Below, one piece after another: positions 9,862 through 58,237 of a stretch of 64,000 nt of DNA (position 1 is the first letter of the stretch; the number at the start of each line of letters is the position of its first letter). The notes below the pieces were generated by a model. That model had not been told where the DNA came from. It did no database searches and saw nothing but the letters and a program-made list of their open reading frames with translations. Origin of the DNA: Octopus sinensis (Eukaryota); contig NC_042998.1 in assembly GCF_006345805.1 (NCBI RefSeq), forward strand, positions 199,020,001 to 199,084,000. The letters run 5' to 3'. The translations under genes were made by a program, and so were the position numbers.

Positions 9862-12800
9862 TGTTTCTTTATTAGCCACACAGGGCTGCACACAGATAGA
9901 ACAAATTACAAGGTAGAACTTTTCTTTTGGAGGTAAAAAAAATTTAAAAAATTAAAATTAAAATTAAAAAAAAAAAGGCTGGGGTCGATCAAAAGGGATC
10001 GTAAAAGGAGAGAAAGCGGACAAAAAAGGGGGGGTTAAAAAAAAGGGGGAGAGGAAAAAAATTGATCAATAGGGATCGTTATCACTGAAATGTCAATATG
10101 AAGTGTAAAGGGGAGGACAGGTGAGGTTTACCCGTGGAAAGAAAAGCCTACGGAAAAGACCACGGTAACCTCGGTCAATGAAGTCACATGTTATATTTCT
10201 TTTTTTTTTTTTTGCAAATAAGCAACTCTCTGTATTAATTTTTACGGTTCATAGAATCATAGTCAAGGTGGCTTCGTCATTCATACGTGCCATCCTTGCT
10301 ACATTCACCATCTTTTTTAAAACATTCACTAGACAAAACTTGCCTCTCTACTCTCACTTTTTTCTTCAAGTGATACTTGAAGAAGTTGATGAGAGATTGA
10401 CCAGAGAGGAAAGTGTTTGTCTCTAATCCTTTCAGACGCGTCCACCAGATACATTCTTTCGCCATAGCCACAAGTATGATAAAAATAGCTCTTCCTTCCC
10501 GTTTGAAGGAAGGAGGCCGTGACGATATTAACGATAGACTCGGCTGATAAACCGACACGTCCCACACGTGACAGCAGTCGTTCGACATAAGCCCACAGGT
10601 GGGAAATTGCTGGACACTGCACGATTGCGTGCAGAGCGGTTTCGTCGCTCTGCCCGCATCTCGGGCAGGTCGGCCCCGTGTTTCTCGAGCCATGCCTATA
10701 GAGCTTATCCCGAACGGGTAGCGCTTCTCGGTAGCACCGCCAGGCCAGGGATCTCTGGAAGTTGTCCATAGGTCCCGGGCCGAAAGTCGTTTGAAACAGG
10801 CGGGTCAGGTATTCCTCGTCGACGACCAGGTTTGCCCCGAGCTCGTCGTCGTACCTCCCCTCCACTAATCCCCTATAGAATGCTTTGGTTGTGTTGAAGT
10901 CACTCAAGGTCGACCCGGGACGGCAGAGTTGCTTGAGAACAACGCGACACTCGCGGTGCCATTCGCCCTTCTTCGGCCTCTTTTTGATCCACGACTGTAG
11001 TTCGGTCATGGAGACGAGTTGCGGGAATGCGTGCCTCACAAACGGCGACCACACCTGTTCACCGTCGTCTACATAGAGCCGGAGATGTCGCAGTCTCAGC
11101 GCGTGTCTGCGCATCATCAACCACGGCATGCCCAGCCCTCCTTTTAACGGGTGTTGACAGCAAATGGATCGCCTGACCATCGGGACGCATCCTTTCCACA
11201 AGAAGCGGAAGAGGATGCGTTCTAGTTTGGTGATGGTAGGGTCGGGACAAGGTACGACGGTCAGGCGGTAGTAGATGATGGACGCGATGTACGCGTTCAC
11301 CACCTCCGTCCGACCTTTTAGGGACAGTTTCCTCTCGGCCCATTGCTGGGCGAGAGTGACCACCCTACTCGCGTTATCTCGTTCCAGTTCTTCTCCATTT
11401 GGAGGTCCGGACCGAACCAGACCCCGAGCAACTCAACCGGGCCGTCTGTCCAGGTCCCACGACGGAGGTACTGGTGGACGGCATGGGCTTGCTTCTCCAG
11501 GTGCCGAGCCGCAAGCCCACTGACTTTTCCCGGTTGATTTTTGCTCCTGTCACCGCTTCGTAGTCTTTCAGTGTCTCGCCGACCCGCTCGATGTGCTCGT
11601 GGCTTGACACTATGACGGTGACGTCGTCCGCGTATGCAGACAACGCTCGTCCCGCATCCTAATTCTTCGCGGGATGCCCCTCAGAGTCGCCAGCTTCCGC
11701 AATAGTGGCTCAAGAGTCAATACGTATAGAAGCGCCGAGAGGGGGCATCCCTGACGGACCGAACGTGCAATGTCGAAGGATCTCGATAGATGTCCATTTA
11801 CGCGAATTACCGAACGGATGCCTCTGTACAAGGCAGCTATCCAGCCGCGGAAGACGGGACCGAAACCAGCCGCTCTCAGGACTGCCTCCAAGTATCGATG
11901 GTCTACCCTATCAAAGGCTTTCGATTGATCCAAGTTGATCAGGGCCCCACCCATGCCAGGTTCGTTAACTACCCTGTCTATGATGTAGCGCATCAGATGG
12001 AGGTTGTCATGGATGCTCCGGCCCGGCACGGCGCACGTTTGTGCGTTGTCGACCAGTTTCTCCATGACAAGCGCCAACCTCTTGGCTAACACCTTTGTCA
12101 AAATTTTCAGGTCTGCATTGAGCAGAGTGATTGGCCTAAAGTTATCTATAATGTTTCCCTTGTTTGGATCTTTCTTCAGCAGAGTTACAGCTCCTCGACT
12201 CACAAAACCGGGTATGCTCCCGTTTTGCTGCCAGTTGCAGTATACCGCTGCCAAGACGTCTCCAAACAAGTCTGGCATACAATAGTAAAATTCGTAGGGT
12301 AGACCATCCAAACCCGTGATTTGTCCCTCGAGCATTCTGCCATCGCTTCCCCCGCACTTCCGCCGCGTGATGGCACCTTCGCAGCACCCTGCCTTTCTTG
12401 TCGAGAGTCGTGGCAGGCTATGTAGGTAGGCACTGAAGTCTACCCTACGTTCTTGCCCTCCACTCGTCCCGAACAGTCGGGCAAAATGCTGCTGAAAGCC
12501 TCACACATTTTACTTGGCTCGAGCAATTCGCGCCCCTGTTCATCTACCAGTGACCGAATGGTGGCTTTGTTGCCCTGTTGCGCCTCTGCCACCCGGGCCT
12601 CTCTCGCGGCTCCAACACCTTCGTTCCTTAGAGCACGCATCCTAGCTCTGACAGCACATCCTTCGTGTTTGGCGTTGAAGTGTTGGTCGAGGGCCAACCT
12701 CGCCGCCAAAACGTCGGATGCGATGCCGCTTCTAATTGCCTCTTCTAGCTTCTTAACTAGCTCACCCTCTACTCTATTTCTATCTATGGCTAGTGCTTTG

Positions 12801-13244
12801 CTGTACCTAATCGCTTCTGCTTTTACTGCTCTCTTGAGGGCAAACAACTATTTGTTGTTGATGATGGCTCCCGTCAAAGCCCTCTTTACTAGTGTGCTAA
12901 TCCGGTCTCTGAAAACTTGTCTGGACGGGAATGAGGCGTTCAGTTTCCAGTACCCAGGACCCTGTCTATGGTGCCTTATCTAAGTCTAGCGTACACGTCA
13001 CCAATTTGTGATCCGGTAGCTGACTGTGTGAATTGTGGACATCCTAAGTTATCCTTGTCTACTGTCCTACACAGTATCCTATCTAGATACGATCTCGACG
13101 ACCCACTGCGGTTGCTCCATGTCCACGTTGGTGCATTTGGGTGGTCGAGTCGGTACCTGTCAGACAGTTGGAATCGTCTGAGCAGGTCTCTGAGGCATTT
13201 GCATCCCCTTCTGTTTCTGTCTCTACCCACGTAGTCTACATGCG

Positions 13245-13245
<1 letters not shown>
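9861..13245 (-). mobile_element. Tx1-clade LINE copy 1 (subfamily A), 5'-truncated within the APE domain, ORF2 frameshifted
   Basis: APE tail SYLDRILCR and GPGYWKLNAS; RT motifs NFRPITLLNADLKIL, DQSKAFDRVDH, RQGCPLS, AYADD; CCHC TCPRCGQSDETALHAIVQC; 3' UTR ends AATAAAGAAACAT directly in (ATCT)n. Confidence 0.95.
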
Positions 13246-13329
<84 letters not shown>

Positions 13330-13373: not shown

Positions 13374-13435
<62 letters not shown>

Positions 13436-32532: not shown

Positions 32533-33133
32533 TATTTCTTTACCACCCACAAGGGGCTAAACACAGAGGGGACAAACAAGGACAGACAAACGGATTAAGT
32601 CGATTATATCGACCCCAGTACGTAACTGGTACTTATTTAATAGACCCCGAAAGGATGAAAGGCAAAGTCGACCTCGCCGGAATTTGAACTCAGAACATAG
32701 CGGCTGACGAAATACCTATTTCTTTACTACCCACAAGGAGCTAAACACAGAGGGGACTAACAAGGACAGACAAACGGATTAAGTCGATTATATCGACCCC
32801 AGTGCGTAACTGGTACTTATTTAATCGACCCCGAAAGGATGAAAGGCTAAGTCGACCTCGCCGGAATTTGAACTCAGAACGTAGCGGCTGACGAAATACC
32901 TATTTCTTTACTACCCACAAGGGGCTGAACACAGAGAGGACAAACAAGGACAGACAAACGGATTAAGTCGATTATATCGACCCCAGTGCATAACTGGTAC
33001 TCAATTTATCGACCCCCGAAAGGATGAAAGACAAAGTCAACCTCGGTGGAATTTGACCTCAGAACGTAACGGCAGACGAAATACCGCTGAGCATTTCGCC
33101 CGGCGTGCTAACGTTTCTGCCATCTCGCCCGCC
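32533..33133 (-). mobile_element. SINE family 1 concatemer: head plus three body units, 18-bp TSD
   Basis: Unit ends at 32533, 32717, 32901; TSD ttcctt[c/g]tcttaaatacc at 32515-32532 and 33134-33151. Confidence 0.9.
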
Positions 33134-34226: not shown

Positions 34227-35260
34227 TTGACTATGGTAGAAAGATAGAAAGTTTTTTTTTAATGTTTCAACGAGCGTTTTTTTTTTTTTTTCTGATTGTA
34301 ATACTAAAGCAGCATGGGAGGTGGGACAGTGAAAACATTCTGAGCTGTTTTGTAGGAAACTCAAAGATTATTTTTTCATTGGAGCTCTGAGAGTTAATAT
34401 TTTTTTCAAATATTTATTATTATTATTATTGACTATGGTAGAAATATAGAAAGTTTTTTAAAAATGTTTCGACGAGCGGTTTTTTTTAAATATTTTTTCT
34501 AATTTTAATACTAAAGCACCATGTGTGTAGGGGGCGGACATTGAAACATTCTCTGCTGTTTTGTAGGAAATTCAAAGATTATTTTTTCATTGGAACTCTG
34601 AGAGTTAATATTTTTTTCAAATATTTATTATTATTATTATTGACTATGGTAGAAATATAGAAAGTTTTTTAAAAATGTTTCGACGAGCGGTTTTTTTAAA
34701 ATATTTTTTCTAATTTTAATACTAAAGCACCATGTGTGTAGGGGGCGGACATTGAAACATTCTCTGCTGTTTTGTAGGAAATTCAAAGATTATTTTTTCA
34801 TTGGAACTCTGAGAGTTAATATTTTTTTCAAATATTTATTATTATTATTATTGACTATGGTAGAAATATAGAAAGTTTTTTTTAAATGTTTCGACGAGCG
34901 GTTTTTTTTAAATATTTTTTCTAATTTTAATACTAAAGCACCATGTGTGTAGGGGGCGGACATTGAAACATTCTCTGCTGTTTTGTAGGAAATTCAAAGA
35001 TTATTTTTTCATTGGAACTCTGAGAGTTAATATTTTTTTCAAATATTTATTATTATTATTATTGACTATGGTAGAAATATAGAAAGTTTTTTAAAAAATG
35101 TTTCGACGAGCGGTTTTTTTTTCTGATTTTAATACTAAAGCAGCATGTGTGTAGGGGGCGGACATTGAAACATTCTCTGCCGTTTTGTCGGAAATTCAAA
35201 GATTATTTTTTCACTGGAGCTCTGAGAGTTAATATTTTTTATATTTATTATTATTATTAT
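34227..35260. repeat. Five-unit ~211-bp tandem repeat
   Basis: ttgactatggtagaa starts at 34227, 34429, 34640, 34851, 35062. Confidence 0.95.
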
Positions 35261-35299: not shown

Positions 35300-36380
35300 A
35301 GGGGATTTGGTCAATTCCAGTGTTTGACTGGTGCTTTATCTTATCGACCCCCGAAGGGATGATAAGCAAAACCGACCTAAACGGAATTTGAAATCTGAAT
35401 GTAAAGAGCGGGAACAAATGAGACAAAACATTTTTCCGGCGCTTCAACAATTCTGCCATCTCACCGCCTTCGCCTTCGTAATAATAATAATCCTTTCTAC
35501 TATAGGCACAAGGCCTGAAGTTTCGGGGAAGGGGGCTTGTCGATTGCAGTACTGAATTGGTACTTATTTTATCGACCCCAGTACTCAACTAGTACTTATT
35601 TTATCGACTCCGAAAGGATGAAAGTCAAAGCCGACCCCGGCGGAATTTGAATTCAGAACGTAAAGATGAACGGAAAGCTGCTAAGAGTTTTTTTTTTTGG
35701 TGGGGGGGGGGGTTCCCGCGCACTAAACGATGCAACCAGCTCGCTGATCGCCCCTGGTGCTCGACTGATACCTTATTTTATTGACACCGAGAGGATAAAA
35801 GGCAAAGTCAACATAGGCAGAATTTGAACTAGGAACGTAGAATCGGAAGAAATGTCACTAATCATTTCATCCGACGCCGTAACGATTTTGCAGTTCGCCT
35901 CCTTATAAAGATGAGAGGAAAAAGATGACCGCGGCGGGAATCAGAATATAAAGAAACTCTGCAATGCGTTTTATCCGATGTTCTGCCGATTTTCTCTATT
36001 CACGAACCCAATAAGATTTTTGGAGGAGGAGACTTATCGATTACGTCGACCACAGTGCTCTACCCTGAAGGAATGAAAGGCAAAATTGACCTTGGCGGAA
36101 TTTGAACTCAGAAACGAGATAGGGACGAAATGCCACTTAGCATTTTTCCAAAGTGCTAACGATTCTGCCGGCTCGCTGCCTTAAAATAATTCTTTCTGCT
36201 GTAGGCACAAGGCTTGGAATTTTAAGTGTAGTGGGGGGGGGCTAGTCGATTACGTCGAATCCTGTACACAATTGGTACTTATTTTATCGATCACGGTGAC
36301 ATTTGAACTCAGAACGTAAAGCCGGAAGAAATGTCGCGAAGCATATTGTCCGGATTCTAAACATTCTGTTAGCTCACCGC
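35300..36380 (-). mobile_element. Cluster of about five old SINE family 1-related copies, same orientation
   Basis: Repeated atcgacccc..aaggatgaaaggcaaagtc..ggcggaatttgaactcagaacg motifs. Confidence 0.65.
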
Positions 36381-39552: not shown

Positions 39553-39573
39553 TATATATATATAAGTTTTACG

Positions 39574-39635
<62 letters not shown>

Positions 39636-39668
39636 TAGATAGATAGATAGATAGATAGAAAGATAGAA

Positions 39669-39703
<35 letters not shown>

Positions 39704-39738
39704 AAGATAGATAGATAGATAGAAAGATAGATAGATAT

Positions 39739-39788
<50 letters not shown>

Positions 39789-39812
39789 GGATAAACAGAT
39801 AGATGGATAAAC

Positions 39813-39886
<74 letters not shown>

Positions 39887-39890
39887 ACAG

Positions 39891-39978
<88 letters not shown>
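39553..39978. repeat. (GATA/GACA)n microsatellite; left flank of the Tx1 array
   Basis: Directly visible; contains GATGGATAAACA variants. Confidence 0.95.
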
Positions 39979-39980
<2 letters not shown>

Positions 39981-42325
39981 GTTTCTTTATTAGCCACACA
40001 GGGCTGCACACAGATAGAACAAATTACAAGGTAGAGCTTTTCTTTTGAAGGTTTAAAAAAAAAAAAAAAAAGGAAGGGGGAGTTTCGATCAAAAGGGATC
40101 GTAAAAGGAGAGAAAGAGGACAAAAAAAAGGGGGGTTAAAAAAAAAAAAAAGGGGGAGAGGAAAAAAAAATTGATCAATAGGGATCGTTATCACAGAAAT
40201 GTCAATATGAAGTGTAAAGGGGAGGACAGGTGAGGTTTACCCGTGGAAAGAAAAGCCTACGGAAAAGACCACGGTAACCTCGGTCAATGAAGTCACATTT
40301 TATATTTCTTTTTTTTTTTTTTTTTTTTTTGCAAATAAGCAACTCTCTGTTTTCGATTTCTGGGTTCATAGGACTATGCTCAAGGTGGCTTCGTCATTCA
40401 TACGTGCCATTCTTGCTACATTCACCCATCTTTTTTTAAAACATTCGCTAGACAAAACTTGCCTCTCTACTCTCACTTTCCTTTTCAAGTGGTACTTGAA
40501 GAAGTTGATGAGAGATTGACCAGAGAGGAAAGTGTTTGTCTCCAATCCTTTCAGACGCGTCCACCAGATACATTCTTTCGCCATAGCCACAAGGATGATG
40601 AAAATAGCTCTTCCTTCCCGTTTGAAGGAAGGAGGCGTGACAATATTGACGATAGACTCAGCTGATAAACCGACTCGTCCCACACGTGACAGCAGTTGTT
40701 CGACATAAGCCCACAGGTCGGAAATTGTTGGACACTGAACGAGTGCGTGCAGAACGGTTTCGTCGCTCTGACCGCATCTCGGGCAGGTCGGCCCCGTGTT
40801 TCTCGAGCCGTGTCTGTAGAGCTTATCCCGAACGGGTAGCGCTTCTCGGTAGCACTGCCAGGCCAGGGATCTCTGGAAGTTGTCCATGGGCCCTGGCCCG
40901 AAAGTCGTCCCGAACAGGCGGGTCAGGTACTCCTCGTCGACGTCCAGGTTCGCCCCGAGCTCGTCGTCGTACCTCCCCTCCACTAAACCCCTATAGAATG
41001 CTTTGGTTGTGTTGAAGTCACTTAAGGTCGACCAGGACGGCAGAGTTGCTTGAGAGCAACGCGACACTCGCGGTGCCATTCGCCCTTCCTCGGCCTCTTT
41101 TTGATCCACGACTGCAGTTCGGTCATGGAGACGAGCTGCGGGAAAGCGTGCCTCACAAACGGCGACCACACCTGTTCACCGTCGTCTACATAGAGCCAGA
41201 GATGTCGCAGTCTCAGCGCGTGTCTGCGCATCATCAACCACGGCATGCCCAGCCCTCCTTTTAACGGGTGTTGACAGCAAATGGATCGCCTGACCATCGG
41301 GACGCATCCTTTCCACAAGAAGCGAAAGAGGATGCGTTGTAGTTTGGTGATGGTAGGGTCGGGACAAGGTACGACGGTCAGGCGGTAGTAGATGACGGAC
41401 GCGATGTACGTGTTCGCCACCTCCGCTCGACCTTTTAGGGACAGTTTCCTCTCGGCCCATTGCCGGGCGAGAGTGACCACCCTAGTCGTTATCTCGTTCC
41501 AGTTCTTCTCCACTTGGAGGTCCGGACAAAACCAGACCCCGAGCAACTCAACCGGGCCGTCTGTCCAGCGTCCCACGACGGAGGCGCTGGTGGACGGCAT
41601 GGGCTTGCTTCTCCAGGTGCCTAGTCGCAAGCCCACTGACTTTTCCCGGTTGATTTTCGCTCCTGTCACCGCTTCGTAGTTTTTCAGTGTCTCGCCGACC
41701 AGCTCGATGTGCTCGTGGCTAGACACTATGACGGTGACGTCGTCCGCGTATGCAGACACGCTCGTCCCGCATCCCAATTCTCGCGGGATGCCCCTTAGAG
41801 TCGCCAGCTTCCGCAGTAGTGGCTCAAGAGTCAATACGTATAGAAGCGCCGAGAGGGGGCATCCCTGACGGACCGAACGTGCAATGTCGAAAGGTCTCGA
41901 TAGATGTCTATTTACGCGAATTACCGAACGGATGACTCTGTACAAGGCAGCTATCCAGCCGCGGAAGACGGACCGAAACCAGCCGCTCTCAGGACTGCCT
42001 CCAAAGAGCGGCTGGTTTCGGTCCCGTCTTCCGCGGCTGGATAGCTGCCTTGTACAGAGGCATCCGTTCGGTAATTCGCGTAAATGGACATCTATCGAGA
42101 CCTTTCGACATTGCACGTTCGGTCCGTCAGGGATGCCCCCTCTCGGCGCTTCTATACGTATTGACTCTTGAGCCACTACTGCGGAAGCTGGCGACTCTAA
42201 GGGGCATCCCGCGAGAATTGGGATGCGGGACGAGCGTGTCTGCATACGCGGACGACGTCACCGTCATAGTGTCTAGCCACGAGCACATCGAGCTGGTCGG
42301 CGAGACACTGAAAAACTACGAAGCG
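39979..42325 (-). mobile_element. Tx1 copy 2 (subfamily A), 5'-truncated in RT, with inverted duplicate 42005-42325
   Basis: Same 3' UTR as copy 1; RQGCPLS, AYADD and CCHC motifs; plus-strand ORF 42050-42343 repeats the RT segment. Confidence 0.95.
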
Positions 42326-42369
42326 AAACAGATAGATAGATAGATGGATAAACAGATAGATGAATAAAC

Positions 42370-42431
<62 letters not shown>

Positions 42432-42473
42432 ACAGATAGATAGATAGATGGATAAACAGATAGATGGATAAAC

Positions 42474-42547
<74 letters not shown>

Positions 42548-42860
42548 GTAGATAGATAACTTTCTTTTATTAGCCACACAGGGCTGAATACAGAGGGGAC
42601 AAATACAAATGCAGAGCTTTTCTTTTCGAGGGTGGAAAAAAATAAAAAATGTAAGATTGCGATCAAAAGGGATCGAGAGGAGGAAAAAAAGGAAAAAAAA
42701 AAAAAATCGTGTATCACAGAAATAATGGTGTAAATATTGATTAACAAGATTGGGTTCATCCGTGGGAAGAAAAGCCTACAGAAAAGACCACGGGAACCCC
42801 AGTCAGGGAGGAAATAAACACATGAGGTCAAAAATGCTCTCTTTCTTTCTTTTTTACGAT

Positions 42861-45800
42861 TTACAGGATCATGCTCAAAATGGTTTCGTTACTAGCACGC
42901 ACCATCTTTGCAACATTCACCATCTTTTTTTTAATCTTTCGCGAGACAAAACTTCCCTCTCCATTCTCACCTTCCTTTTCAAGTGGTACTTGAAAAAGTT
43001 GATGAGCGATTGGCCAGAGAGGTAAGTGTTTGTCTCTAATCCTTTCGCTCGAGTCCACCACACACATTCTTTCACCATGGCCACCAGTACGATGAAAACT
43101 GCCTTGCCTTCCCGGTTGAGGGAAGGGGGCGGAGCAATCTCACGATAGACTCGGCCGATAGGCGGATTCGTCCCACACGTGACAGCAGCCGTTCGGCATA
43201 AGCCCACAGGTCGGAAATGGTTGGACATTGCACGAGTGCATGCAGAACGGTTTCGTCGCTCTGACCGCATCTCGGGCAAGTCGGTCCAGTGTGTCTGGAA
43301 CCGTGTCTGTAGAGCTTATCCCGAACAGGTAATGCTTCTCGATAGCACTGCCAGGCCAGGGATCTTTGGTGATTGTTCATAGGTCCCGGCCCGAAAGTTG
43401 TCCTGAACAGGCGGGTCAGGTGTTCCTCGTCGACGCCCAGACTCTGCCCGAGTTCGTCGTCGCACCTCCCCTCCACTAATCCTCTATAGAATGCCTTTGT
43501 TGTGATGGAGTCGCACAAGTTCGATCCGGACGGCAGAGTTGCTTGAGAGCAACGCGACACTCGCGGTGCCATTCGCCTAGCCTCGGTCTCTGCTTGATCC
43601 ATGACTGTAGTTCGTCCAAGGAGACGAGCTGCGGGAAAGCGCGCCGCACAAAAGGCGACCACCCCTGTTCACCGTTGTCTATGAAGCGCCGGAGATGTCG
43701 CAGTCTCAGCGCATGTCTGCGCATCATCAACCACGGCATGCCCAGCCCTCCATTTAGCGGGTGTTGGCAGCAAATGGATCGCCTAACCATCGGAACGTTT
43801 CCCTTCCACAAGAAGCGGAAGAGTATGCGTTCCAGTTTGGTGATGGTAGGGTCGGGACAAGGCACGACGGTCAGACGATACTCGATGACGGATGCGATGT
43901 ACGCGTTCGCCACCTCCGCCCGACCTTTTAGGGATAGCTTTCTCTCAGTCCATTTCTGGTGAGAGTAGCCACCCTAGTCGTTATCTCGCCCCAGTTCTTC
44001 TCCATTTGGAGGTCCGGACCGAACCAGACCCCCGAGCATTTTAACCGGTCCGTCCGTCCAGCGTCCCACGATGGAGACGCTGTTGGACGGCATGGGCTTG
44101 CTTCTCCAGGTGCCGAGCCGCAAGCCCACTGACTTTTCCCCCGTTAATTTTTGCTCCCGTTACCGCTTCGTATTCTTTCAGTGTCTCGCCGACCAGCTCG
44201 ATGTGCTCGTAGCTCGACACTATGACGGTGACGTCATCCGCGTATGCAGACACGCTCCTCCCGCATCCCAGCTCTCGTGGGATGCCCCTCAGCGTCGCCA
44301 GTTTCCGCAGTAGTGGCTCAAGAGTCAGTACATACAGCAGCAATGAGAGGGGGCATCCCTGACGAACCGAACGCATGATGTTAAAAGGTCTGGATAGATG
44401 ACCATTTACGCGAACTACTGAGCGGATGCCGCTGTATAAGGCAGCGATCCAACCGCGGAAAACTGGACCGAAACCAGCCGCTTTGAGGACAGCCTCCAAG
44501 TATTGATGGTCTACCCTATCGAAGGCTTTTGATTGATCCAAATTGATCAGCGCCCCACCCATGCCAGGATTTTTAACTACCCTGTCTATGATGTAGCGCA
44601 TCAGATGGAGGTTGTCATGAATACTTCTCCCGGCACGGCGCATGTTGCGCCTTGTCGATTAGTTTCTTGATGACAAGCGCCAACCTCTCGGCTAACACCT
44701 TGGCCAAAATTTTCAAATCTGCGTTGAGCAGAGTGATGGGCCTGAAATTATCTATGACGTCCCCCTTGTTTGGGTCTTTCTTGATCAGTGCCACTGCTCC
44801 TCGCTTTACACAAAGCAGGAATACTCCCGTTCTGCTGCCAGTTGCAGTAGACAGCTGCCAAGACGCCTCCAAACAAGTCTGGCATATGAAAATAAAATTC
44901 GTAGGGCAGACCATCCAAGCCTGGTGACTTGTCTCTCGCGCAGCCTACCATCGCATCCTGTACGTCCGCAGCTGTGATAGGCTTTTCACACAAGACTCCA
45001 CCTCCCTTGCTGAGAGTCGTGGCAAGGCATGCAGGTAGGCACTAAAGTCCACTCTGCTTTCTGACTCACCACTTGTCCCAAACAGTTGGTGAAGTGTTGT
45101 TGAAAAACCCCACACATCCTTTTAGGCTCGAGCAATTCGCGCCCCTGTTCATCTATAAGAGACTTGATGGTGGCTCTGTTGCCTCGTTGCGTCTCCACCA
45201 CTCGGGTCTCTTGGGCGGCTCCAACTCCTTCGTTCCTCAGAGCACGCATCCTAGCTCTGACAACGCATCCCTCGTGTTTGGCGTTGAGGTGTTGATCGAG
45301 GGCCAATCTCGCCGCCAGTACGTTGGACGCGATGCCAGTTCTAAGTGCCTCTTCTAAAACCTTAACTAAATCTCCCTCTATTCTATTTCGGTCTAATGCT
45401 AGGGCTCTACTGTATCTGACTGATTCTGCTTTAATCGCTTTTTTTAGGGCATACCACCATCTGTTGTTGATGATGGTACCCGTCAAAGCTCTCTTAACTA
45501 ATGTGCTGATCCGGTCCCTGTAAACCTGTCGTGCTGTAAAAGACGCGTTCAGTTTCCAGTAACCAGGACCCTGCCTATGTGTCTTATCTAAGTCAAGTGT
45601 ACAAGTCACAACTTGTGATCTGTGTAACTGACTATATGAAATTGTGGACAACCTACACTATTTTTCTATTGTCCTACAGAATACTCTATCTAAGTATGAT
45701 CTGGACGACCCGATGCGGTTACTCTCCATGTCCACATTGGCACATTCGGGTGGTCCAGTCGGTACCTGTCAGACAGTTGGAAACGTCTGAGCAGGTCTTT

Positions 45801-46292
45801 GAGGCATTTGCATCCCCTTCTATTGCTATCTCTGCCCACGTAGTCTAGATGCGTGTCCAGGTGGCATTCCATCCCCCACTAAAAGTAAAGGACGAGACGT
45901 TCCCATGAAAGACTCTAGACGTCGAAAGAAATCTGGTCGGCCTGTTAAGGACGGAGCATAAACTGCTATCAGTCGAAAAGCACACTCATTGCTGCCATCG
46001 ACATCTAAAACGACCAGCCTACCCTCCGGGTCTAGGAATTTGCTCTTACTTTGAGATCCAGACTCTTCCGGATAAGCACCGCGGTGCCACCTCCGCCCAT
46101 TCTCGGTAGACACGGAGAAAAATAAATGTTGAAATGTGTACCGAAAATGTGCTGGAGTGCCCGCAAGCTGTGGAGTCTGGTCTCACTGATGGCTATGATA
46201 TTCAGATTTAGTGACTTGATGTCATTTAACAGGTAGCCTTGTTTCCAAGGCGACCCCAAGCCACGTACATTTATACTACCTATTCTGAGCAT
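42861..46292 (-). pseudogene. Tx1 ORF2 (APE endonuclease, reverse transcriptase, CCHC zinc finger), multiply frameshifted
   Basis: MLRIGSINVRGL..AISETRL; VYAP; LLVGD; GPGYWKLNAS; NFRPITLLNADLKIL; DQSKAFDRVDH; RQGCPLS; AYADDV; TCPRCGQSDETVLHALVQC. Confidence 0.92.
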
Positions 46293-46334
46293 GTTCCGAT
46301 AAAAGTGCAAAAAAGGAAAAGGAGAGAGAAAAGG

Positions 46335-48120
46335 TTACTTGTTTTTCGAAAGTTCTTTGTCTTTCACCTCACGGTCTTCTTCTATGAGGCTTTTATACAG
46401 TTTTTTCGATGAGTACTTTTGAAATCTCCCTACTGCATCAGGGTAAAGAGATTTCAGGGTGCTGTATGTGTTCTGTGTCACGTGTATTATTTTAATGTGT
46501 TGTGGTGGTGTTGTGTGTGGGTGGTTACTTGTTTTTATGTCGTTTTCAGTAATGTTAGTGTTTGACCTAATGTGTTCCATTAGGTCGTGGTTGTTTGTGT
46601 TAATGGTTGTCAACATTTTGGGGGGGTTTGATGATGGTGTGTTTGTGTTGATGTGTGTGTTTTCTGTGGATGTTTTTGTTTCGGGAGTGGTGTATCTTCC
46701 CGCTTTGTTTGTTATTTTTTCTTTTCTTTTTTTTCCCCTTTTTCTTCTCCCCCCTGTGGCTATTTGCCAATCTTCCGTGTCTTCTTCGTCTAATGACAGA
46801 TCAGACGAATCGGAGTCTGGAAGAGGGATAGTATTGGGGTCTATTGTCGACTGTGTTGATTTTGTTGTTGGTGTTGGTTGGTGAGCGTTTGGTTGTGGTG
46901 TATGCGGTTTTGGATGTGGGGTTTGGGTATTTTGTGTTTGAGTGATTGTGGGTATTGTTGTGTTGTTTAGGGTCTCAATTTTGTGGGGATTTGGAGTTGT
47001 AATTGTTTCTTCATTTTTGCTGGGTGTGTCTTTTTGGCAGATGTCCTTGGTTTGGGAGTTGGTATATTCTTGGTTGTTGTTGTTGGTGATGCTGCTTTGT
47101 TCTTGGTGCTGCAGTTGGTGTGGTTGTTTGTTTGGTGAGGTTTGTTCCTGCAAAAAGTGGTGTGGGTAGTAAACCTTGTTTATTTGTTTTTGTTTCCGGC
47201 TGCTGTTGTTGTTGCTGTTGTTTTCTTGCGGCAGATTTGCAGTCTTTTTTTAGGTGTTGCTCACTGCCGCATATGTAGCAACGTGGTCTTCTGCCATCGA
47301 CGACCACATATAACTTGTGGTCGTCTGATACACATATCTGGGTGGGTATTTTTTTATATCTTCATGATGTATATGTAGAAGAAATTCTACTTTTTTTCCC
47401 ACCCAGTTTTTATGCTCTGTGACTGTGGTTTCCAAAATAGTATAATTCGCCATTTTTACGCATAAGGCCTTTACAAGCCATAGACTATTGGCTATTTTGG
47501 GGACATTGTTTAGAGTGATCTTAGTCACTTTCTGTCCCCGATAGCTTGGTGTAAGTTGGAGTTCATCTGAGTGAAGAGTTAGCGTTGAGAAATGTCTAGC
47601 TAACTCTTCGGTGTAGAAAACAACTTGTATGTGGGCAAATTTGTTCCACCAGGTTACATATTCTTTGTGATCCCAGATGGGTTTCAAGCACTTCTCTATT
47701 TTGCTTGTGTTGGCCTTCTCTGGGATTTTTGTTTTTTTTTTTAACTATTTTATAAATGATTGTTCGTCTTTTTTCATTTTCCAAAATGTCTTCTGGTATG
47801 TTTATGTTTACTATACCTTCTGATTCTGTTATTTTGATGTTCGTGTCCTGTATTTGTTGAGCCGTAAAGTATATTGTTGTTTTTTTTTTTAATCGCCTCA
47901 GCGAAATTTGTTGTTGTTTGTTATTGTTGTTGCTTGTGGTGATGTTGTTGTTGGCTGCAGTTTGTAAAATTGGTGTGTTTGGTTCGATCGTGCAAGTAGG
48001 AAAGGGTGGAAAATTGCCTGCGTACTTTAGTCCTGCACTAGGGCAAATTTCGACATTTCGTTTGCTTGTCGTCGTTATTTTTTCACTGTTGGTGATGGAG
48101 TGAGCAGTGGTTGAAGGGAA

Positions 48121-48152
<32 letters not shown>

Positions 48153-48489
48153 ATTGTCGTTCTTGGTGACGGCGGTGGTGTTGGTAGTATTAGTAGCATT
48201 GACGGCACGGTCTTTGGTGGCGGTGATGGTGATGTTGGTGTTGTTATTGGTGGCGATATCTTTAGTAGGGATAGCAGTTTTAGTAGCAGATTCTGCCATG
48301 GTGTTGGTGGTGGTGGTGGACTCACTGATGGTGTTGACGGTGCTTGGCCTTGCGACCTTTGTTTTGTATTTGTTGCTGTTGATGGTGGTGGAGTTGTCAG
48401 GTTCGGCGTATGCTAACAGAGCATCCTGTTTTTCTGTTTCTGCGCGTTACGCTTGACTTGCCCTCAGCCTCGTGGTGGCCAGTGGCCAT
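46335..48489 (-). pseudogene. Tx1 ORF1 (gag-like nucleic-acid-binding protein with CCHC knuckle), frameshifted
   Basis: RPRCYICGSEQHLKKDC (C-X2-C-X4-H-X4-C) at ~47240-47300; basic GGRRKRGKKRKEK patch; Thr/Asn/Pro-rich linkers; start ATG at 48489 is inferred. Confidence 0.75.
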
Positions 48490-48706
48490 TTTGGAAATAA
48501 AATGGCTAAATGAAACCACGAAGGCTATGAGAATTTTTTCTTTTAAATTTTGCCCACAAGGGGCAAAATTTTGTGTCGATATTTATCAAAGGTTTACAGT
48601 GGATGTTGTTGCACAACTTTTAAGCACAAAATGTTTGTCAATATACACTTTTAAATAGTCAAAATAAATGATTACCTTCGGAGCTGAAACGACATCACAT
48701 CCGTCA

Positions 48707-48736
<30 letters not shown>

Positions 48737-48737
<1 letters not shown>

Positions 48738-49977
48738 TGTTTCTTTATTAGCCACACAGGGCTGCACACAGATAGAACAAATTACAAGGTAGAGCTTTTC
48801 TTTTGAAGGTTTAAAAAAAAATTAAAAAAAAAAAAAAGGAAGGGGGAGTTACGATCAAAAGGGATTGTAAAAGGAGAGAAAGAGGACAAAAGAAAGGGGG
48901 TGTTAAAAAAAAAAAAAAAAAAAAAAGGGGGAGAGGAAAAAAAAATTGATCAATAGGGATCGTTATCACAGAAATGTCAATATGAAGTGTAAAGGGGAGG
49001 ACAGGTGAGGTTTACCCGTGGAAAGAAAAGCCTAGGGAAAAGACCACGGTAACCTCGGTCAATGAAGTCACATTTTATATTTCTTTTTTTTTTTTTTTTT
49101 TTTGCAAATAAGCAACTCCCTGTTTTCGATTTCTGGGTTCATAGGACTATGCTCAAGGTGGCTTCGTCATTCATACGTGCCATTCTTGCTACGTTCACCC
49201 ATCTTTTTTAAAACATTCGCTAGACAAAACTTGCCTCTCTACTCTCACTTTCCTTTTCAAGTGGTACTTGAAGAAGTTGATGAGAGATTGACCAGAGGGG
49301 AAAGTGTTTGTCTCCAATCCTTCCAGACGCGTCCACCAGATACATTCTTTCGCCATAGCCACAAGGATGATGAAAATAGCTCTTCCTTCCCGTTTGAAGG
49401 AAGGAGGCGTGACAATATTGACGATAGACTCAACTGATAAACCGACTCGTCCCACACGTGACAGCAGTTGTTCGACATAAGCCCACAGGTCGGAAATTGT
49501 TGGACACTGAACGAGTGCGTGCAGAACGGTTTCGTCGCTCTGCCCGCATCTCGGGCAGGTCGGCCCCGTGTTTCTCGAGCCGTGTCTGTAGAGCTTATCC
49601 CGAACGGGTAGCGCTTCTCGGTAGCACTGCCAGGCCAGGGATCTCTGGAAGTTGTCCATGGGCCCTGGCCCGAAAGTCGTCCCGAACAGGCGGGTCAGGT
49701 ACTCCTCGTCGAACAACTACTGTCACGTGTTGGACGAGTCGGTTTATCAGCTGAGTCTATCGTCAATATTGTCACGCCTCCTTCCTTCAAACGGGAAGGA
49801 AGAGCTATTTTCATCATCCTTGTGGCTATGGCGAAAGAATGTATCTGGTGGACGCGTCTGAAAGGATTGGAGACAAACACTTTCCCCTCTGGTCAATCTC
49901 TCATCAACTTCTTCAAGTACCACTTGAAAAGGAAAGTGAGAGTAGAGAGGCAAGTTTTGTCTAGCGAATGTTTTAAA

Positions 49978-49978
<1 letters not shown>
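48737..49978 (-). mobile_element. Tx1 copy 4 (subfamily A), 5'-truncated, with inverted duplicate 49708-49978
   Basis: 3' UTR nearly identical to copy 2; CCHC domain; plus-strand repeat of 49206-49476. Confidence 0.95.
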
Positions 49979-50037
<59 letters not shown>

Positions 50038-50039
50038 AC

Positions 50040-50070
<31 letters not shown>

Positions 50071-50071
50071 C

Positions 50072-50115
<44 letters not shown>

Positions 50116-50116
<1 letters not shown>

Positions 50117-50793
50117 TGTTTCTTTATTAGCCACACAGGGCTGCACACAGATAGAACAAATTACAAGGTAGAGCTTTTCTTTTGAAGGTATTAAAAAAAA
50201 AAATAAAAAAAAAAAAGGAAGGGGGAGGTTCGATCAAAAGGGATCGTAAAAGGAGAGAAAGAGGACAAAAATAAGGGGGTTAAAAAAAAAAAAAAAAAAA
50301 GGGGGGAGAGGAAAAAAAAATGATCAATAGGGATCGTTATCACAGAAATGTCAATATGAAGTGTAAAGGGGAGGACAGGTGAGGTTTACCCGTGGAAAGA
50401 AAAGCCTGCAGAAAAGACCACGGTAACCTCGGTCAATGAAGTCACATTTTATATTTCTTTTTTTTTTTTTTTTTTTTTTGCAAATAAGCAACTCTCTGTT
50501 TTCGATTTCTGGGTTCATAGGACTATGCTCAAGGTGGCTTCGTCATTCATACGTGCCATTCTTGCTACATTCACCCATCTTTTTTTAAAACATTCGCTAG
50601 ACAAAACTTGCCTCTCTACTCTCACTTTCCTTTTCAAGTGGTACTTGAAGAAGTTGATGAGAGATTGACCAGAGAGGAAATTGTTTGTTGTCCAATCCTT
50701 TCAGACGCGTCCACAGATACATTCTTTCGCCATAGCCACAAGGATGATGAAAATAGCTCTTCCTTCCCGTTTGAAGGAAGGAGGCGTGACAAT
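50116..50793 (-). mobile_element. Tx1 copy 5 (subfamily A), ~680-bp 3' fragment
   Basis: Same 3' UTR and ORF2 C-terminus; GATA on both sides. Confidence 0.95.
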
Positions 50794-50890
<97 letters not shown>

Positions 50891-50907
50891 GTAGATAGAT
50901 AGATAGC

Positions 50908-50993
<86 letters not shown>
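50794..50993. repeat. (GATA)n microsatellite; right flank of the Tx1 array
   Basis: Directly visible. Confidence 0.95.
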
Positions 50994-50994
<1 letters not shown>

Positions 50995-50997
50995 GTA

Positions 50998-51412
50998 TAG
51001 ACGCAAGCGTGGTTGTGTGGTAAGCAGTTTGTTTCCCAACCACATAATTACGGGCTCAGTCCCACTGCGTAGCACTTTGGGCAAGCGTCAGCTTCTATAA
51101 CCTCGGACCGACCAAAGCTGCGTCAATATATTTTGGTAGACTGAAACCGAAAGAAGGCCGTAGAATATATTGTGCATGTGGCGAGTGTGTGTGTATGTGC
51201 ACGTGTGTGTCTGCTTCTGTATTTGTATCCACAACTACTTGACAACCGGTGTTGGAGTGTTTACGTCTCTGTAACATACCAGTTCGGTTAAAGAAAGGCA
51301 TAAATTAAGTACCAGGCTTAAAAAAGAAAAGTAAGTGCTTGCATCGATTCATTCGACTAAAATTCTTCGAGACAGTGCCCCAGCATGGCCACAGTCTAAT
51401 GACACAAGCAAG
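50998..51412 (+). mobile_element. SINE family 2 copy
   Basis: Colinear with 7978-8388 (gtggttgtgtggtaag, cactttgggcaag, gaccaaagc, cagcatggccacagtc). Confidence 0.75.
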
Positions 51413-52458
51413 TAATATATAACATATGTATATATATACATATATAAATATAAAATACAAAATGGGACAAGAGCGCAAAACATCAAGATAGACGATACAA
51501 AAAACACGAACAGGTCATTCGAAGCCTTTAATCTTCAGTCAAGAAACGGATCATCCTCGTAATTTCGGCTGATTAATCTTGAGATTGCTTCAATCTGGCC
51601 AGCCCCAAGGAAAAACTAAGCTAAGAGCCTTAGATTCCTTGCGAAAAGGATCGAATGTATACGAAAGCAGGACAGAAAAACGGACGATGTTACACGAATA
51701 TAAATACAAAAAAGCAATAATAATAATAATAATAACAGAACATAACAACAGGCGTCTTTCGACTGGAAACGAATTGAATTCAGCTGGCGTATTGAGAATA
51801 AGCCTTACGACAGATGAAAAGAACGATGTTACCGTGCCCGTGGTCCGACGCAAAAGGGCTAGTCGGCCAGCGGTCACGTGAGAGAAGAGAGAGAAAAATA
51901 GAAGCAAAGGAATTAAGGAGGGGGAGAAGAAAGAGAGCGCGTAGACCGAAGAATCAAGGATTGCCGAGAAAAAAGAAAGACAGGGACAGCGAAGTGCAAA
52001 GTAAAAAAGGCAAAGAAATGTGAGAGAGGGGGGAGAGAGAGTGTGTTGAAGTCGTACAAAGTTTAGTGAAATGTGTACTTACATATAAGAGAACAAAGTG
52101 TACATAGCCGCTATATATATATGGTTGTTCAAATGATGAATAGCTTTGCGTAAACCATGGTCCGTTTTGTTCTCTTACTTTATTATCATCTTATAATCAT
52201 CTCATAATAATGACCTTTATGACTCGTATTTTTACCTCAATCAATCTAAATGTATATATTTGTCTTTACCTGTCATAAATAGCCTTTTTTTATTTGCAAA
52301 GTGCATTTTCGTTGATTTTTCATATTTTACCTTTACATTTCCACGTGTATTTTATATTTTCTTTTCGTAACATATTTCTACTATATATATATAATATATA
52401 TATATATTATATATATATATATATTATATATATATATATATATTATATATATATATAT

Positions 52459-57819: not shown

Positions 57820-58237
57820 AGGCGGCGAGCTGGCAGAAACGTTAGCATGCCGGGCAAAATGCTTAGCGGTATTTCGTCTGCCGTTACGTTCTGAGTTCAA
57901 TTTCCGCCGAGGTCGACTTTGCCTGCCATCTTTTCGGGGTCGATAAATTAAGTACCAGTTACGCACTGGAGTCGATGTCATGGATTTAATCCGTTTGTCT
58001 GTCCTTGCTTGTCCCCTCTGTGTTTAGCCCTTTGTGGGTAGTAAAAGAAATAGGTATTTCATCTGCCGTTATGTTTTGAGTTCAAATTCCGCCGAGGTCG
58101 ACTTTGCCTGTCATCCTTTCGGGGTCGATAAATTAAGGACCAGTTACGCACTGGAGTCGATGTAATCGAATTAATCCGTTTGTCTGTCCTTGTTTGTCCC
58201 CTCTGTGTTTAGCCCCTTTGTGGGCAGTAAAGAAATA
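57820..58237 (+). mobile_element. SINE family 1 head plus two body units, TSD-flanked
   Basis: tatacatgtactaatta (57803-57819) / tatactgtactaatta (58238-58253). Confidence 0.9.

What the first reader, a model, noticed from the sequence alone, without database searches (positions are those of the whole stretch)
39553..50993. Head-to-tail array of four Tx1 LINEs stacked in one (GATA)n microsatellite
Seen: an 11.4-kb array of GATA - copy 2 - GATA (233 bp) - copy 3 - GATA (29 bp) - copy 4 - GATA (137 bp) - copy 5 - GATA. All copies are on the minus strand, come from two subfamilies, have different 5' truncation points and end directly in (ATCT)n without poly(A). Different truncations argue for serial independent insertions rather than segmental duplication. 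Established: comparable arrays are made by telomere-repeat-specific elements (SART/TRAS) and by sequence-specific Tx1 families. Inference: a recently active, interstitial (GATA)n-specific retrotransposon system that preserves or regenerates its own target. This is the best candidate for an undescribed system in the window.
Basis: partly seen in the sequence, partly recalled or inferred. Interest (0 to 1): 0.9.

Follow-up and report, generated by a model that had tools for sequence, protein, structure and literature searches.

The report
LINE copies stacked in GATA microsatellite
An octopus-type jumping gene (an L1/Tx1-group LINE) has inserted at least five separate times into (GATA)n simple repeats in this window, four of them head to tail in one repeat; this looks like a new target for an already known kind of repeat-homing retrotransposon, not a new kind of system.

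Summary
Four minus-strand copies of one LINE lineage lie head to tail at 39981-50793. (GATA)n tracts of 229, 31 and 139 bp separate them, and tracts of 407 and 201 bp bound the array. A fifth copy (9862-13246) sits in a separate (GATA)n tract.

Every copy ends ...GGCTAATAAAGAAAC directly in (ATCT)n with no poly(A). Every 5' junction also abuts (ATCT)n. The truncation points all differ: one copy is full length (6148 bp) and the others are 3385, 2349, 1240 and 677 bp. Two copies carry different 5' inverted duplications. The full-length copy is only about 81-83% identical to the rest. This means serial independent insertions, not duplication.

The protein has APE endonuclease, RT and zf-RVT domains, and its best solved relative is human L1 ORF2p. 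Published trees place all octopus L1-superfamily LINEs in Tx1, but I could not test that directly for this element.

An independent relative with an intact 1148-aa ORF2 also ends in (ATCT)n. Other relatives end in (ATT)n or in no repeat. The local tRNA-like SINE shares the LINE's 3' tail.

Best reading: a microsatellite-homing LINE whose (AUCU)n RNA tail matches its target and renews it at each insertion. It is a new member of a known kind (Kibi, Koshi, Dong). All five window copies are defective, and no genome-wide census was possible.

The parts
39574..39980 (.). T0: the (GATA)n tract 3' of c2. It reads (ATCT)17 ATTT (ATCT)5 next to c2, then a variant block, then (GTCT)n runs.
39981..42329 (-). 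c2: a 5'-truncated LINE copy of 2349 bp from the young subfamily. It covers ORF2 aa ~600-1148 with 2 frameshifts. Positions 42007-42325 are an inverted duplicate of a segment that is also present in the direct part.
42330..42558 (.). T1: the 229-bp (GATA)n tract between c2 and c3. It holds two tandem copies of the block GTTT(ATCT)15-18 GTTTATYCATCTATCTGTTTATCC (ATCT)4, which recurs in T0.
42559..48706 (-). c3: a full-length LINE of 6148 bp from the older subfamily, about 81-83% identical to the others. It runs 5' UTR, ORF1, ORF2, 3' UTR. ORF2 is broken by at least 8 frame changes.
47250..47687 (-). The conserved ORF1 domain of c3, ending in a CX2CX4HX4C zinc knuckle (CYICGSEQHLKKDC). It is 48% identical to the ORF1 part of an O. 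bimaculoides gene model.
45589..46292 (-). The APE-type endonuclease region of c3 ORF2, which is frameshifted. The intact relative P0290 keeps the motifs that align with those of L1-EN (N8, E37, Y112, D141/N143, D203 from the printed alignment; D-H read by eye).
44025..44771 (-). The reverse transcriptase domain of c3 ORF2 (Pfam RVT_1).
43204..43365 (-). The C-terminal zinc-binding motif of c3 ORF2 (Pfam zf-RVT).
42559..42620 (-). The conserved 3' terminal tail, TTTGTCCCCTCTGTATTCAGCCCTGTGTGGCTAATAAAAGAAAG. It is shared with the other copies, with Argonauta LINEs and SINEs, and with the window's 184-bp SINE. It contains an AATAAA.
48707..48737 (.). T2: the 31-bp (GATA)n between the c3 5' end and the c4 3' end. 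It is too short to cause a mis-join.
48738..49977 (-). c4: a 5'-truncated copy of 1240 bp. Positions 49710-49977 are an inverted duplicate of an internal segment.
49978..50116 (.). T3: the 139-bp (GATA)n between c4 and c5.
50117..50793 (-). c5: a 5'-truncated copy of 677 bp.
50794..50994 (.). T4: the 201-bp (GATA)n 5' of c5. No LINE lies upstream of it. It is bordered by an unrelated interspersed repeat.
9862..13246 (-). c1: a separate 5'-truncated copy of 3385 bp, cut within the APE domain. It lies between (GATA)n 9644-9861 and 13247-13435. The unique flanks of this locus and of the array are not homologous.

Best explanation
This is an array built by serial, independent target-primed reverse transcription of an octopod L1-superfamily LINE (probably Tx1 clade) that homes to (GATA)n/(TATC)n microsatellites.

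Shown:
- The elements encode an APE endonuclease, an RT and a C-terminal zinc motif.
- Their sense strand ends in a conserved ~45-nt tail containing AATAAA, followed directly by (ATCT)n.
- Both junctions of every copy lie in the same repeat, in the same orientation.
- The copies differ in truncation point, in 5' rearrangement and in subfamily.

Inferred mechanism:
- Transcripts run into, or end in, the (AUCU)n that follows each copy.
- The endonuclease nicks the (GATA)n strand of a microsatellite.
- The freed 3' end base-pairs with the (AUCU)n of the RNA and primes cDNA synthesis inside the repeat. This would explain why there is no poly(A) and why the junction register varies (AT(ATCT)n versus (ATCT)n).
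- Synthesis often stops early, giving 5' truncation, or switches strand, giving 5' inverted duplications.
- Each insertion leaves repeat on both sides and adds a new (ATCT)n tail.

Likely order: c3 (old and decayed) came first, and c2, c4 and c5 came later.

Whether specificity lies mainly in the endonuclease or in RNA-target pairing is not resolved.
For: - Layout and junctions.
- (GATA)n covers 3.1% of the non-LINE sequence. All five 5' junctions fall in such tracts (p ~3e-8, or ~9e-4 for c1 and c5 alone). The tracts are 1540 bp GATA-sense versus 17 bp TATC-sense on the plus strand.
- A ~115-bp variant block of the tract lies immediately 5' of c2 and again 3' of c2, after a 23-unit tail. Removing c2 plus that tail restores a regular three-block tract, so c2 entered an existing tract.
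- Four (GATA)n tracts in the window carry no LINE, so the repeat exists independently of the element.
- Domains are RVT_1, Exo_endo_phos and zf-RVT. The catalytic motifs of the endonuclease align with L1-EN. Human L1 ORF2p is the best solved relative, collinear over aa 5-883.
- An independent contig, L011, carries an intact 1148-aa ORF2 about 80% identical in the C-terminal part compared. It ends ...GGCCAATAAAGAAATCTATC(ATCT)n.
- Relatives with the same tail motif end in (ATT)35+ (L012) or (ATT)n (Argonauta L003, which also has (ATT)17 upstream of a SINE-SINE-SINE-LINE stack).
- An O. bimaculoides gene model fuses an ORF2 C-terminus to an ORF1. This implies another same-strand LINE-LINE pair, whose spacing is unknown.
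- In a published tree, octopus L1-superfamily LINEs fall in Tx1 next to Tx1_XT and KoshiTn1.
Against: - The census is small: five copies at two loci in one window, plus one 3' end elsewhere. Three of the five 5' flanks are simply the tail of the next copy.
- One Argonauta relative (L010) ends GAAATCTATTTTT with no microsatellite. Argonauta SINEs that end ...GAAATCTAT(T) sit in varied flanks. Repeat homing is therefore not universal in the lineage, and the (ATCT)n could have begun as an element-borne tail.
- No read data were available to confirm the assembly.
- No copy in the window is intact.
- Cleavage specificity of the endonuclease is untested.
Confidence: 0.72

Rival explanations
1. Tail seeding without target choice. 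The LINE inserts more or less anywhere and carries its own (ATCT)n 3' tail, as snake CR1-L3 LINEs seed (ATAG)n. On this view the tracts are products of insertion and later expansion, and the stacking reflects only a loose preference for AT-rich tails.
For: - Relatives in Argonauta end in a single ATCTAT(T) and lie in non-repeat flanks.
- Tail type varies among families: ATCT, ATT or none.
- Snake CR1-L3 seeding of ATAG microsatellites is documented.
Against: - c1 and c5 have 191- and 201-bp (ATCT)n tracts at their 5' junctions with no LINE upstream.
- The same variant block flanks c2 on both sides.
- Four LINE-free (GATA)n tracts are present in the window.
- Five of five 5' junctions lie in tracts that cover 3.1% of the sequence.
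Confidence: 0.12
2. Homing by RNA pairing alone or at DNA breaks. Specificity comes only from annealing of the (AUCU)n tail to exposed (GATA)n DNA at replication-stalled or broken microsatellites. The endonuclease is unspecific or dispensable.
For: - The junction register varies among copies of one subfamily.
- Related families with nearly the same 3' motif carry different repeats, which is easier to change in an RNA tail than in a nuclease.
- The SINE with a non-repeat tail also stacks head to tail.
Against: - The intact relative keeps all the catalytic motifs of the endonuclease.
- Nothing in the sequence separates this reading from nuclease-based choice. It is a variant of the main explanation rather than a contradiction of it.
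Confidence: 0.1
3. Assembly artefact. Reads from different GATA-flanked copies elsewhere in the genome were joined at the repeats.
For: All the joins lie in simple repeats. T0, T1 and T4 are 200-400 bp long. No reads were available to me.
Against: - T2 is 31 bp and T3 is 139 bp, too short to mislead a long-read assembler.
- T1 and T0 share an idiosyncratic variant block across c2.
- A similar same-strand LINE-LINE pair is implied in O. bimaculoides, and a SINE-LINE stack in Argonauta.
Confidence: 0.04
4. Local segmental duplication or unequal crossing-over between GATA tracts, followed by deletions.
For: The tracts could promote unequal exchange. T1 contains a tandem duplication of a ~115-bp block.
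Against: - The four copies have four different 5' ends and two unrelated inverted segments.
- c3 is about 81-83% identical to the others.
- c2, c4 and c5 are about equally distant from one another (95.5-97% over their shared 3' regions) rather than nearest-neighbour similar.
- The unique flanks of the c1 locus and of the array are not homologous.
Confidence: 0.02

Closest known systems
Kibi and Koshi (Tx1 clade, teleost fish), and the crocodilian Tx1 families that target (TTCC)n/(TTTC)n
   Same: These are APE-type LINEs of the L1/Tx1 group that insert specifically into a microsatellite, in one orientation, with related families using different repeats. A published tree places octopus L1-superfamily LINEs beside KoshiTn1 and Tx1_XT.
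   Different: - The target here is the tetranucleotide (GATA)n, which I did not find listed for any LINE in the searchable literature.
- The host is a cephalopod.
- Direct phylogenetic placement of this element was not obtained.
Dong (R4 clade; silkworm, mosquito, and the snail Biomphalaria), which targets (TAA)n
   Same: It is a microsatellite-specific LINE and is present in molluscs. Relatives of the present element end in (ATT)n, the same repeat class.
   Different: From general knowledge, Dong is an R2/R4-group element with a restriction-like endonuclease. This element has an N-terminal APE domain and L1-like collinearity.
Snake CR1-L3 LINEs ('microsatellite seeding' of ATAG and AATAG)
   Same: A LINE whose 3' end carries an ATAG/GATA-class repeat and which spreads that repeat through the genome.
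   Different: - It belongs to the CR1 clade.
- It is described as seeding by the tail, not as insertion into existing tracts.
- Here both junctions lie in the repeat and copies stack head to tail.
SART1/TRAS1 (R1 clade, silkworm telomeric repeats), and other head-to-tail LINE arrays such as Drosophila HeT-A/TART and Chlorella Zepp (from general knowledge)
   Same: Repeat-specific insertion that yields oriented head-to-tail arrays and renews the target.
   Different: - Those arrays are telomeric; this one is interstitial.
- Solved TRAS1/R1 endonuclease structures (which I know of from memory) did not appear among the endonuclease search hits at E up to 1, whereas L1-EN did.
- There is no poly(A) here.
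Stringent-type LINE/SINE pairs with 3' repeats, such as eel UnaL2/UnaSINE1 (from general knowledge)
   Same: A conserved 3' tail plus short terminal repeats, shared between a LINE and a tRNA-derived SINE.
   Different: UnaL2 belongs to the L2 clade and is not known to home to its repeat. The predicted 4-bp hairpin in the tail here has almost no covariation support.

Membership tests
L1 superfamily (L1/Tx1 group) non-LTR retrotransposon | ORF2 with an N-terminal APE endonuclease, a central RT and a C-terminal Cys/His motif, collinear with L1 ORF2p | tested here: met
   - Pfam finds Exo_endo_phos at 8-208, RVT_1 at 511-759 and zf-RVT at 981-1034 in the intact relative P0290.
- RVT_1 and zf-RVT are found in the window copies.
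- P0290 scores 185 bits against human L1 ORF2p over aa 5-883, against 72 bits for R2.
- The L1-EN catalytic motifs align.
L1 superfamily (L1/Tx1 group) non-LTR retrotransposon | ORF1 upstream of ORF2 with a CCHC zinc knuckle | tested here: met
   The c3 ORF at 47250-47687 ends in CYICGSEQHLKKDC. Pfam found no named ORF1 domain. The ORF1 is homologous to the ORF1 part of an O. bimaculoides model.
Tx1 clade | The RT domain groups with Tx1L/Tx1_XT, Keno, Kibi and Koshi in a phylogeny, to the exclusion of L1 proper | tested here: inconclusive
   - No true Tx1 reference sequence was reachable.
- Against a bivalve consensus labelled LINE/L1-Tx1, P0290 scores 201 bits at 23% identity, about the same as against human L1.
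- Indirect support: RTclass and the published tree place every O. sinensis and O. bimaculoides L1-superfamily cluster in Tx1. The window family occurs in O. bimaculoides at 93-97% amino-acid identity.
Microsatellite-specific LINE (Kibi/Koshi/Dong type) | Both the 5' and 3' junctions lie inside the same microsatellite, in a fixed orientation | tested here: met
   Five of five copies have (ATCT)n on the sense strand at both junctions. The chance of this is estimated.
Microsatellite-specific LINE (Kibi/Koshi/Dong type) | The same flank type recurs genome-wide (Kojima's criterion: more than 20% of flanks) | not testable with these tools
   - The source genome is not searchable here.
- The only outside evidence is contig L011, which ends in (ATCT)n.
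- Short-read contigs break at the tail.
- Two metagenome scans found nothing useful.
Microsatellite-specific LINE (Kibi/Koshi/Dong type) | The endonuclease cleaves the target repeat specifically | not testable with these tools
   This needs a biochemical assay. Only conservation of the catalytic residues could be shown.
Tail-seeding LINE (snake CR1-L3 type) | The microsatellite is at the 3' end only, and the 5' flank is unrelated sequence | tested here: not met
   All five 5' flanks are (ATCT)n. Two of them have no LINE upstream.
Telomeric-repeat LINEs (SART/TRAS, R1 clade) | R1-clade endonuclease and RT, with insertion in telomeric repeats | tested here: not met
   - Solved TRAS1/R1 endonuclease structures (known to me from memory) did not appear among the endonuclease search hits at E up to 1; L1-EN did.
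- The array is flanked by 39 kb and 13 kb of ordinary sequence.
- The repeat is GATA, not a telomeric unit.

The most novel reading that the evidence does not exclude
In this octopod LINE lineage the target may be set by the short repeat at the 3' end of the RNA rather than by the nuclease. Families with almost the same 3' recognition motif carry (ATCT)n, (ATT)n or a single ATCTAT, and each is found in, or stacks onto, sequence matching its own tail. The partner SINE also stacks head to tail. If so, this would be a naturally retargetable, RNA-guided homing LINE that both consumes and regenerates its microsatellite. It could then be a major source of (GATA)n tracts and of tandem SINE arrays in octopus genomes.
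Probability: 0.2. Interest if true: 0.65.

Novelty: new member of a known kind. Interest (0 to 1): 0.42.

Why it matters
- It would add a tetranucleotide, (GATA)n, and a cephalopod host to the short list of microsatellite-homing LINEs.
- Sister families that differ in tail repeat (ATCT, ATT, none) but keep the same 3' recognition motif form a natural series. That series could be used to ask whether target choice is set by the nuclease or by RNA-target pairing.
- It links this LINE lineage to the 184-bp tRNA-like SINE of the source genome (copies at several sites in this window) through a shared 3' tail, and Argonauta LINEs to their SINEs in the same way.
- In practice, such arrays are likely trouble spots for assembly and gene prediction. 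One O. bimaculoides gene model is a fusion of two stacked LINEs.

Tried and rejected
- **Rfam and tRNA scans of the window.** Neither found anything.
- **Names of homologues.** All three protein searches returned almost only unnamed ENA/JGI proteins. None carried a Tx1 name.
- **Tx1 versus L1 using a labelled bivalve L1-Tx1 consensus from a paper's supplement.** P0290 was equidistant from it and from human L1, so the comparison was uninformative.
- **Census through short-read and metagenome contigs.** Most contigs stop just before or at the tail. L014 lacks the 3' end.
- **Two metagenome pattern scans.** One gave no hits and the other gave 24 bacterial chance hits.
- **More distant relatives.** L001 (about 54% identical in the RT, 34% in the C-terminal region) showed no microsatellite at its 3' end.
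- **A 3' hairpin as the RT recognition element.** Only 4 bp are predicted, with negligible covariation. I do not rely on it.
- **A long (~115 bp) target-site duplication as a general feature.** The block pattern around c2 fits it, but c4 leaves room for at most 28 bp and T1 has a tandem copy with no element in it. I leave it open.
- **Segmental duplication between the c1 and c2 loci.** The unique flanks are not homologous.
- **Literature.** Eight full-text searches found no LINE described as (GATA)n-specific. Repbase and Dfam entries could not be checked.

Full report

Yes. Tandem Repeats Finder lists (GATA)n arrays at 39574-39980, 42330-42558, 48707-48737, 49978-50116 and 50794-50994. Aligning the longest inter-tract segment against the whole window shows that every segment between these tracts is a copy of one element on the minus strand. 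A fifth copy lies at about 9.9-13.2 kb.

With refined boundaries the copies are:
- c1, 9862-13246 (3385 bp)
- c2, 39981-42329 (2349 bp)
- c3, 42559-48706 (6148 bp)
- c4, 48738-49977 (1240 bp)
- c5, 50117-50793 (677 bp)

The spacers are 229, 31 and 139 bp.

In sense orientation each copy ends ...CAGCCCTGTGTGGCTAATAAAGAAAC and runs straight into (ATCT)n. c3 has GGCTAATAAAAGAAAG followed by TT(ATCT)n. There is no poly(A). Each 5' end also abuts (ATCT)n directly.

**2. Independent insertions or duplication?**

In c3 coordinates the 5' ends are at 1 (c3), 2853 (c1), 4208 (c2), 5274 (c4) and about 5569 (c5).

c2 begins with a 319-bp inverted copy of c3 positions 4225-4543. c4 begins with a 268-bp inverted copy of positions 5512-5778. 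In both cases the inverted segment is also present in the direct part. These are therefore inverted duplications, which fit strand switching or fold-back during cDNA synthesis better than textbook twin priming.

c2, c4 and c5 are 95.5-98.9% identical to one another and about equally distant from each other. c1 is 88-97% identical to them. c3 is about 81-83% identical to all of them over its long alignments, and its ORF2 changes frame at least eight times.

The unique flanks of the c1 locus and of the array are not homologous. These features fit serial retrotransposition and argue against segmental duplication.

**3. Into the repeat, or only next to it?**

(GATA)n covers 3.1% of the non-LINE sequence of the window. 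Five of five 5' junctions inside such tracts has p of about 3e-8. For c1 and c5 alone, whose upstream tracts (191 and 201 bp) have no LINE beyond them, it is about 9e-4.

The tract 5' of c2 ends with the block GTTT(ATCT)15 GTTTATTCATCTATCTGTTTATCC (ATCT)4. The tract 3' of c2 reads (ATCT)17 ATTT (ATCT)5 and then GTTT(ATCT)18 GTTTATCCATCTATCTGTTTATCC... A third copy of the block lies in tandem just upstream. Removing c2 and its 23-unit tail restores a regular tract, so c2 entered a pre-existing tract. Whether the repeated block is a long target-site duplication or an older higher-order repeat cannot be decided.

Four further (GATA)n tracts in the window (about 4.1, 37.8, 38.4 and 53.8 kb) carry no LINE tail. 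The repeat therefore exists independently of the element.

**4. Could it be a mis-assembly?**

I had no reads. The c3-c4 and c4-c5 joins are only 31 and 139 bp of repeat. The c2-c3 tract shares its unusual variant block with the tract on the other side of c2. Similar stacks are implied elsewhere (section 7). I give this rival about 4%.

**5. What the element is.**

Pfam finds RVT_1 and zf-RVT in the window copies.

A cluster-mate of a homologue that is 80% identical over the C-terminal 267 aa, P0290, is an intact 1148-aa ORF2 with Exo_endo_phos, RVT_1 and zf-RVT. It aligns collinearly with human L1 ORF2p over aa 5-883 at 185 bits, against 72 bits for R2 proteins. Its endonuclease aligns with L1-EN and keeps the catalytic motifs. 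Solved TRAS1 and R1 endonucleases, which I know of from memory, did not appear among the hits of that search at E up to 1.

The c3 ORF1 ends in a CCHC knuckle.

The element is therefore an L1-superfamily LINE. The Tx1 label could not be tested directly. No Tx1-named protein came back from any search. A bivalve consensus labelled L1-Tx1 is as distant from P0290 as human L1 is (201 versus 185 bits).

Indirect evidence does point to Tx1:
- The closest named homologues are from Argonauta hians, Octopus bimaculoides (93-97% over the stretch matched) and cuttlefish.
- A published analysis classifies every O. sinensis and O. bimaculoides L1-superfamily cluster as Tx1, in a clade next to Tx1_XT and KoshiTn1 (PMC10294476 supplements).
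- A recent O. vulgaris annotation lists 13 recently active L1-Tx1 families without mentioning a target (PMC13282606).

**6. Relatives and their tails.**

- L011 is an independent metagenome-derived contig that carries P0290. It ends ...GCGTGGCCAATAAAGAAATCTATC(ATCT)n at the contig end. The (ATCT)n end is therefore a family trait and not a peculiarity of this window.
- L012 (72% amino-acid identity) ends ...GTGGCCAATAAAAGAAATC followed by (ATT) at least 35 times.
- In Argonauta hians, one apparently full-length copy (its ORF2 matched from aa 2; 5' end not mapped) ends ...GTGGCTAATAAAAGAAAT plus (ATT)n. It lies downstream of (ATT)17 and three tandem tRNA-like SINEs (L003).
- Another Argonauta copy, whose ORF2 aligns to P0290 aa 1-1146 in a single reading frame, ends GAAATCTATTTTT with no repeat (L010).
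- More distant relatives showed no repeat: L001, about 54% identical in the RT and 34% in the C-terminal region.

The lineage thus keeps a conserved 3' motif while the terminal repeat differs between families.

**7. Other stacks.**

The O. bimaculoides protein model A0A0L8GCS6 joins an ORF2 C-terminus (93-97% identical to the young copies) to a T/N-rich stretch and an ORF1 (48% identical to c3 ORF1, E 1e-42). This implies an ORF2 3' end lying upstream of a LINE 5' region on the same strand, at another locus.

**8. SINE partner.**

The window's 184-bp SINE-like unit (no tRNA or Rfam hit) shares its last ~40 nt with the LINE tail, especially that of c3. Argonauta SINEs share theirs with Argonauta LINEs.

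Most SINE copies in the window are in head-to-tail arrays. One pair consists of a 5'-truncated copy abutting a full copy. Identity within arrays is only slightly higher than between arrays (93.6 versus 91.2%). This suggests a mix of serial insertion and local duplication.

A predicted 4-bp hairpin in the tail has almost no covariation support.

**9. Mechanism.**

Shown: the junction anatomy, the domain content, the independence of the copies, and insertion into an existing tract.

Inferred:
- Transcripts include downstream (AUCU)n.
- The endonuclease nicks the GATA strand.
- The nicked end pairs with the RNA repeat and primes reverse transcription inside it. This would account for the absence of poly(A) despite an AATAAA about 10 nt from the end, and for the variable junction register (AT(ATCT)n versus (ATCT)n).
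- Each event adds a new tail, so the target is renewed and stacks grow.

The relative roles of nuclease specificity and RNA pairing are open.

**10. Comparison with what is known.**

The microsatellite-targeting LINEs listed in the literature I could search are:
- Waldo, (ACAY)n
- Mino, (AC)n
- Kibi, (TC)n
- Koshi, (TTC)n
- Dong, (TAA)n
- crocodilian Tx1 families, (TTCC)n/(TTTC)n

These come from PMC3812793 and PMC4494074. Snake CR1-L3 LINEs seed (ATAG)n and (AATAG)n (PMC8303610). I found no LINE described as (GATA)n-specific, but Repbase and Dfam could not be consulted.

**11. Verdict.**

The finding is a new member (new target, new host group) of a known kind, not a new system. The Tx1 label and genome-wide specificity remain to be shown. 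Interest is moderate.

Noticed in passing
window 23126-24221, 24472-24812, 32527-33079 (minus strand), 57874-58237, 13763-14030, 61371-61553: A 184-bp tRNA-like SINE unit shares its last ~40 nt with the LINE 3' tail. Most copies sit in head-to-tail arrays. One pair is a 5'-truncated copy abutting a full copy. Identity is 93.6% within arrays and 91.2% between arrays.
   Followed up: partly
window 42007-42325 (c2) and 49710-49977 (c4): The 5' ends carry inverted duplications of segments that are also present in the direct part of the same copy. In c2 the two arms are separated by only about 15 nt, giving a fold-back shape. This is not the usual twin-priming layout.
   Followed up: partly
window 42330-42558 and 39574-39980: A ~115-bp variant block, GTTT(ATCT)15-18 GTTTATYCATCTATCTGTTTATCC (ATCT)4, occurs three times: twice in tandem 5' of c2, and once 3' of c2 after its tail. 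It is either a long target-site duplication or a higher-order repeat of the microsatellite.
   Followed up: partly
whole window: All (GATA)n tracts have the same orientation: 1540 bp GATA-sense versus 17 bp TATC-sense on the plus strand. All five LINE copies are on the minus strand.
   Followed up: no
L003 4847-11200 (Argonauta hians, GCA_054771915.1): (ATT)17, three tandem 157-bp tRNA-like SINEs, an apparently full-length related LINE, and then (ATT)n. This is a parallel stack in a different microsatellite. Contig L012 ends its LINE in (ATT) repeated at least 35 times.
   Followed up: partly
P0128 (UniProt A0A0L8GCS6, Octopus bimaculoides): This annotated protein is a fusion of a LINE ORF2 C-terminus with the ORF1 of another LINE. 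It is a gene-model artefact that probably spans a head-to-tail LINE pair.
   Followed up: yes
window 17-145 (+): A 43-aa fragment of a related LINE ORF2 (70% identical to P0290 aa 786-828), with no 3' end and no GATA nearby.
   Followed up: partly
window 50996-51415 and 7976-8375: Two copies (73% identical over 425 bp) of another, unidentified interspersed repeat. One of them borders the array's outer GATA tract.
   Followed up: no
window 34227-35260 and 35317-36290: A 211-bp tandem repeat (5 copies), followed by several partial SINE-head fragments on the minus strand.
   Followed up: no
P0124 (NCBI 'MAG: zinc-binding domain-containing protein [Herbaspirillum sp.]'): A protein filed under a bacterial metagenome-assembled genome is 63-64% identical to this octopod LINE ORF2. 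It is most likely eukaryotic contamination of the bin.
   Followed up: no
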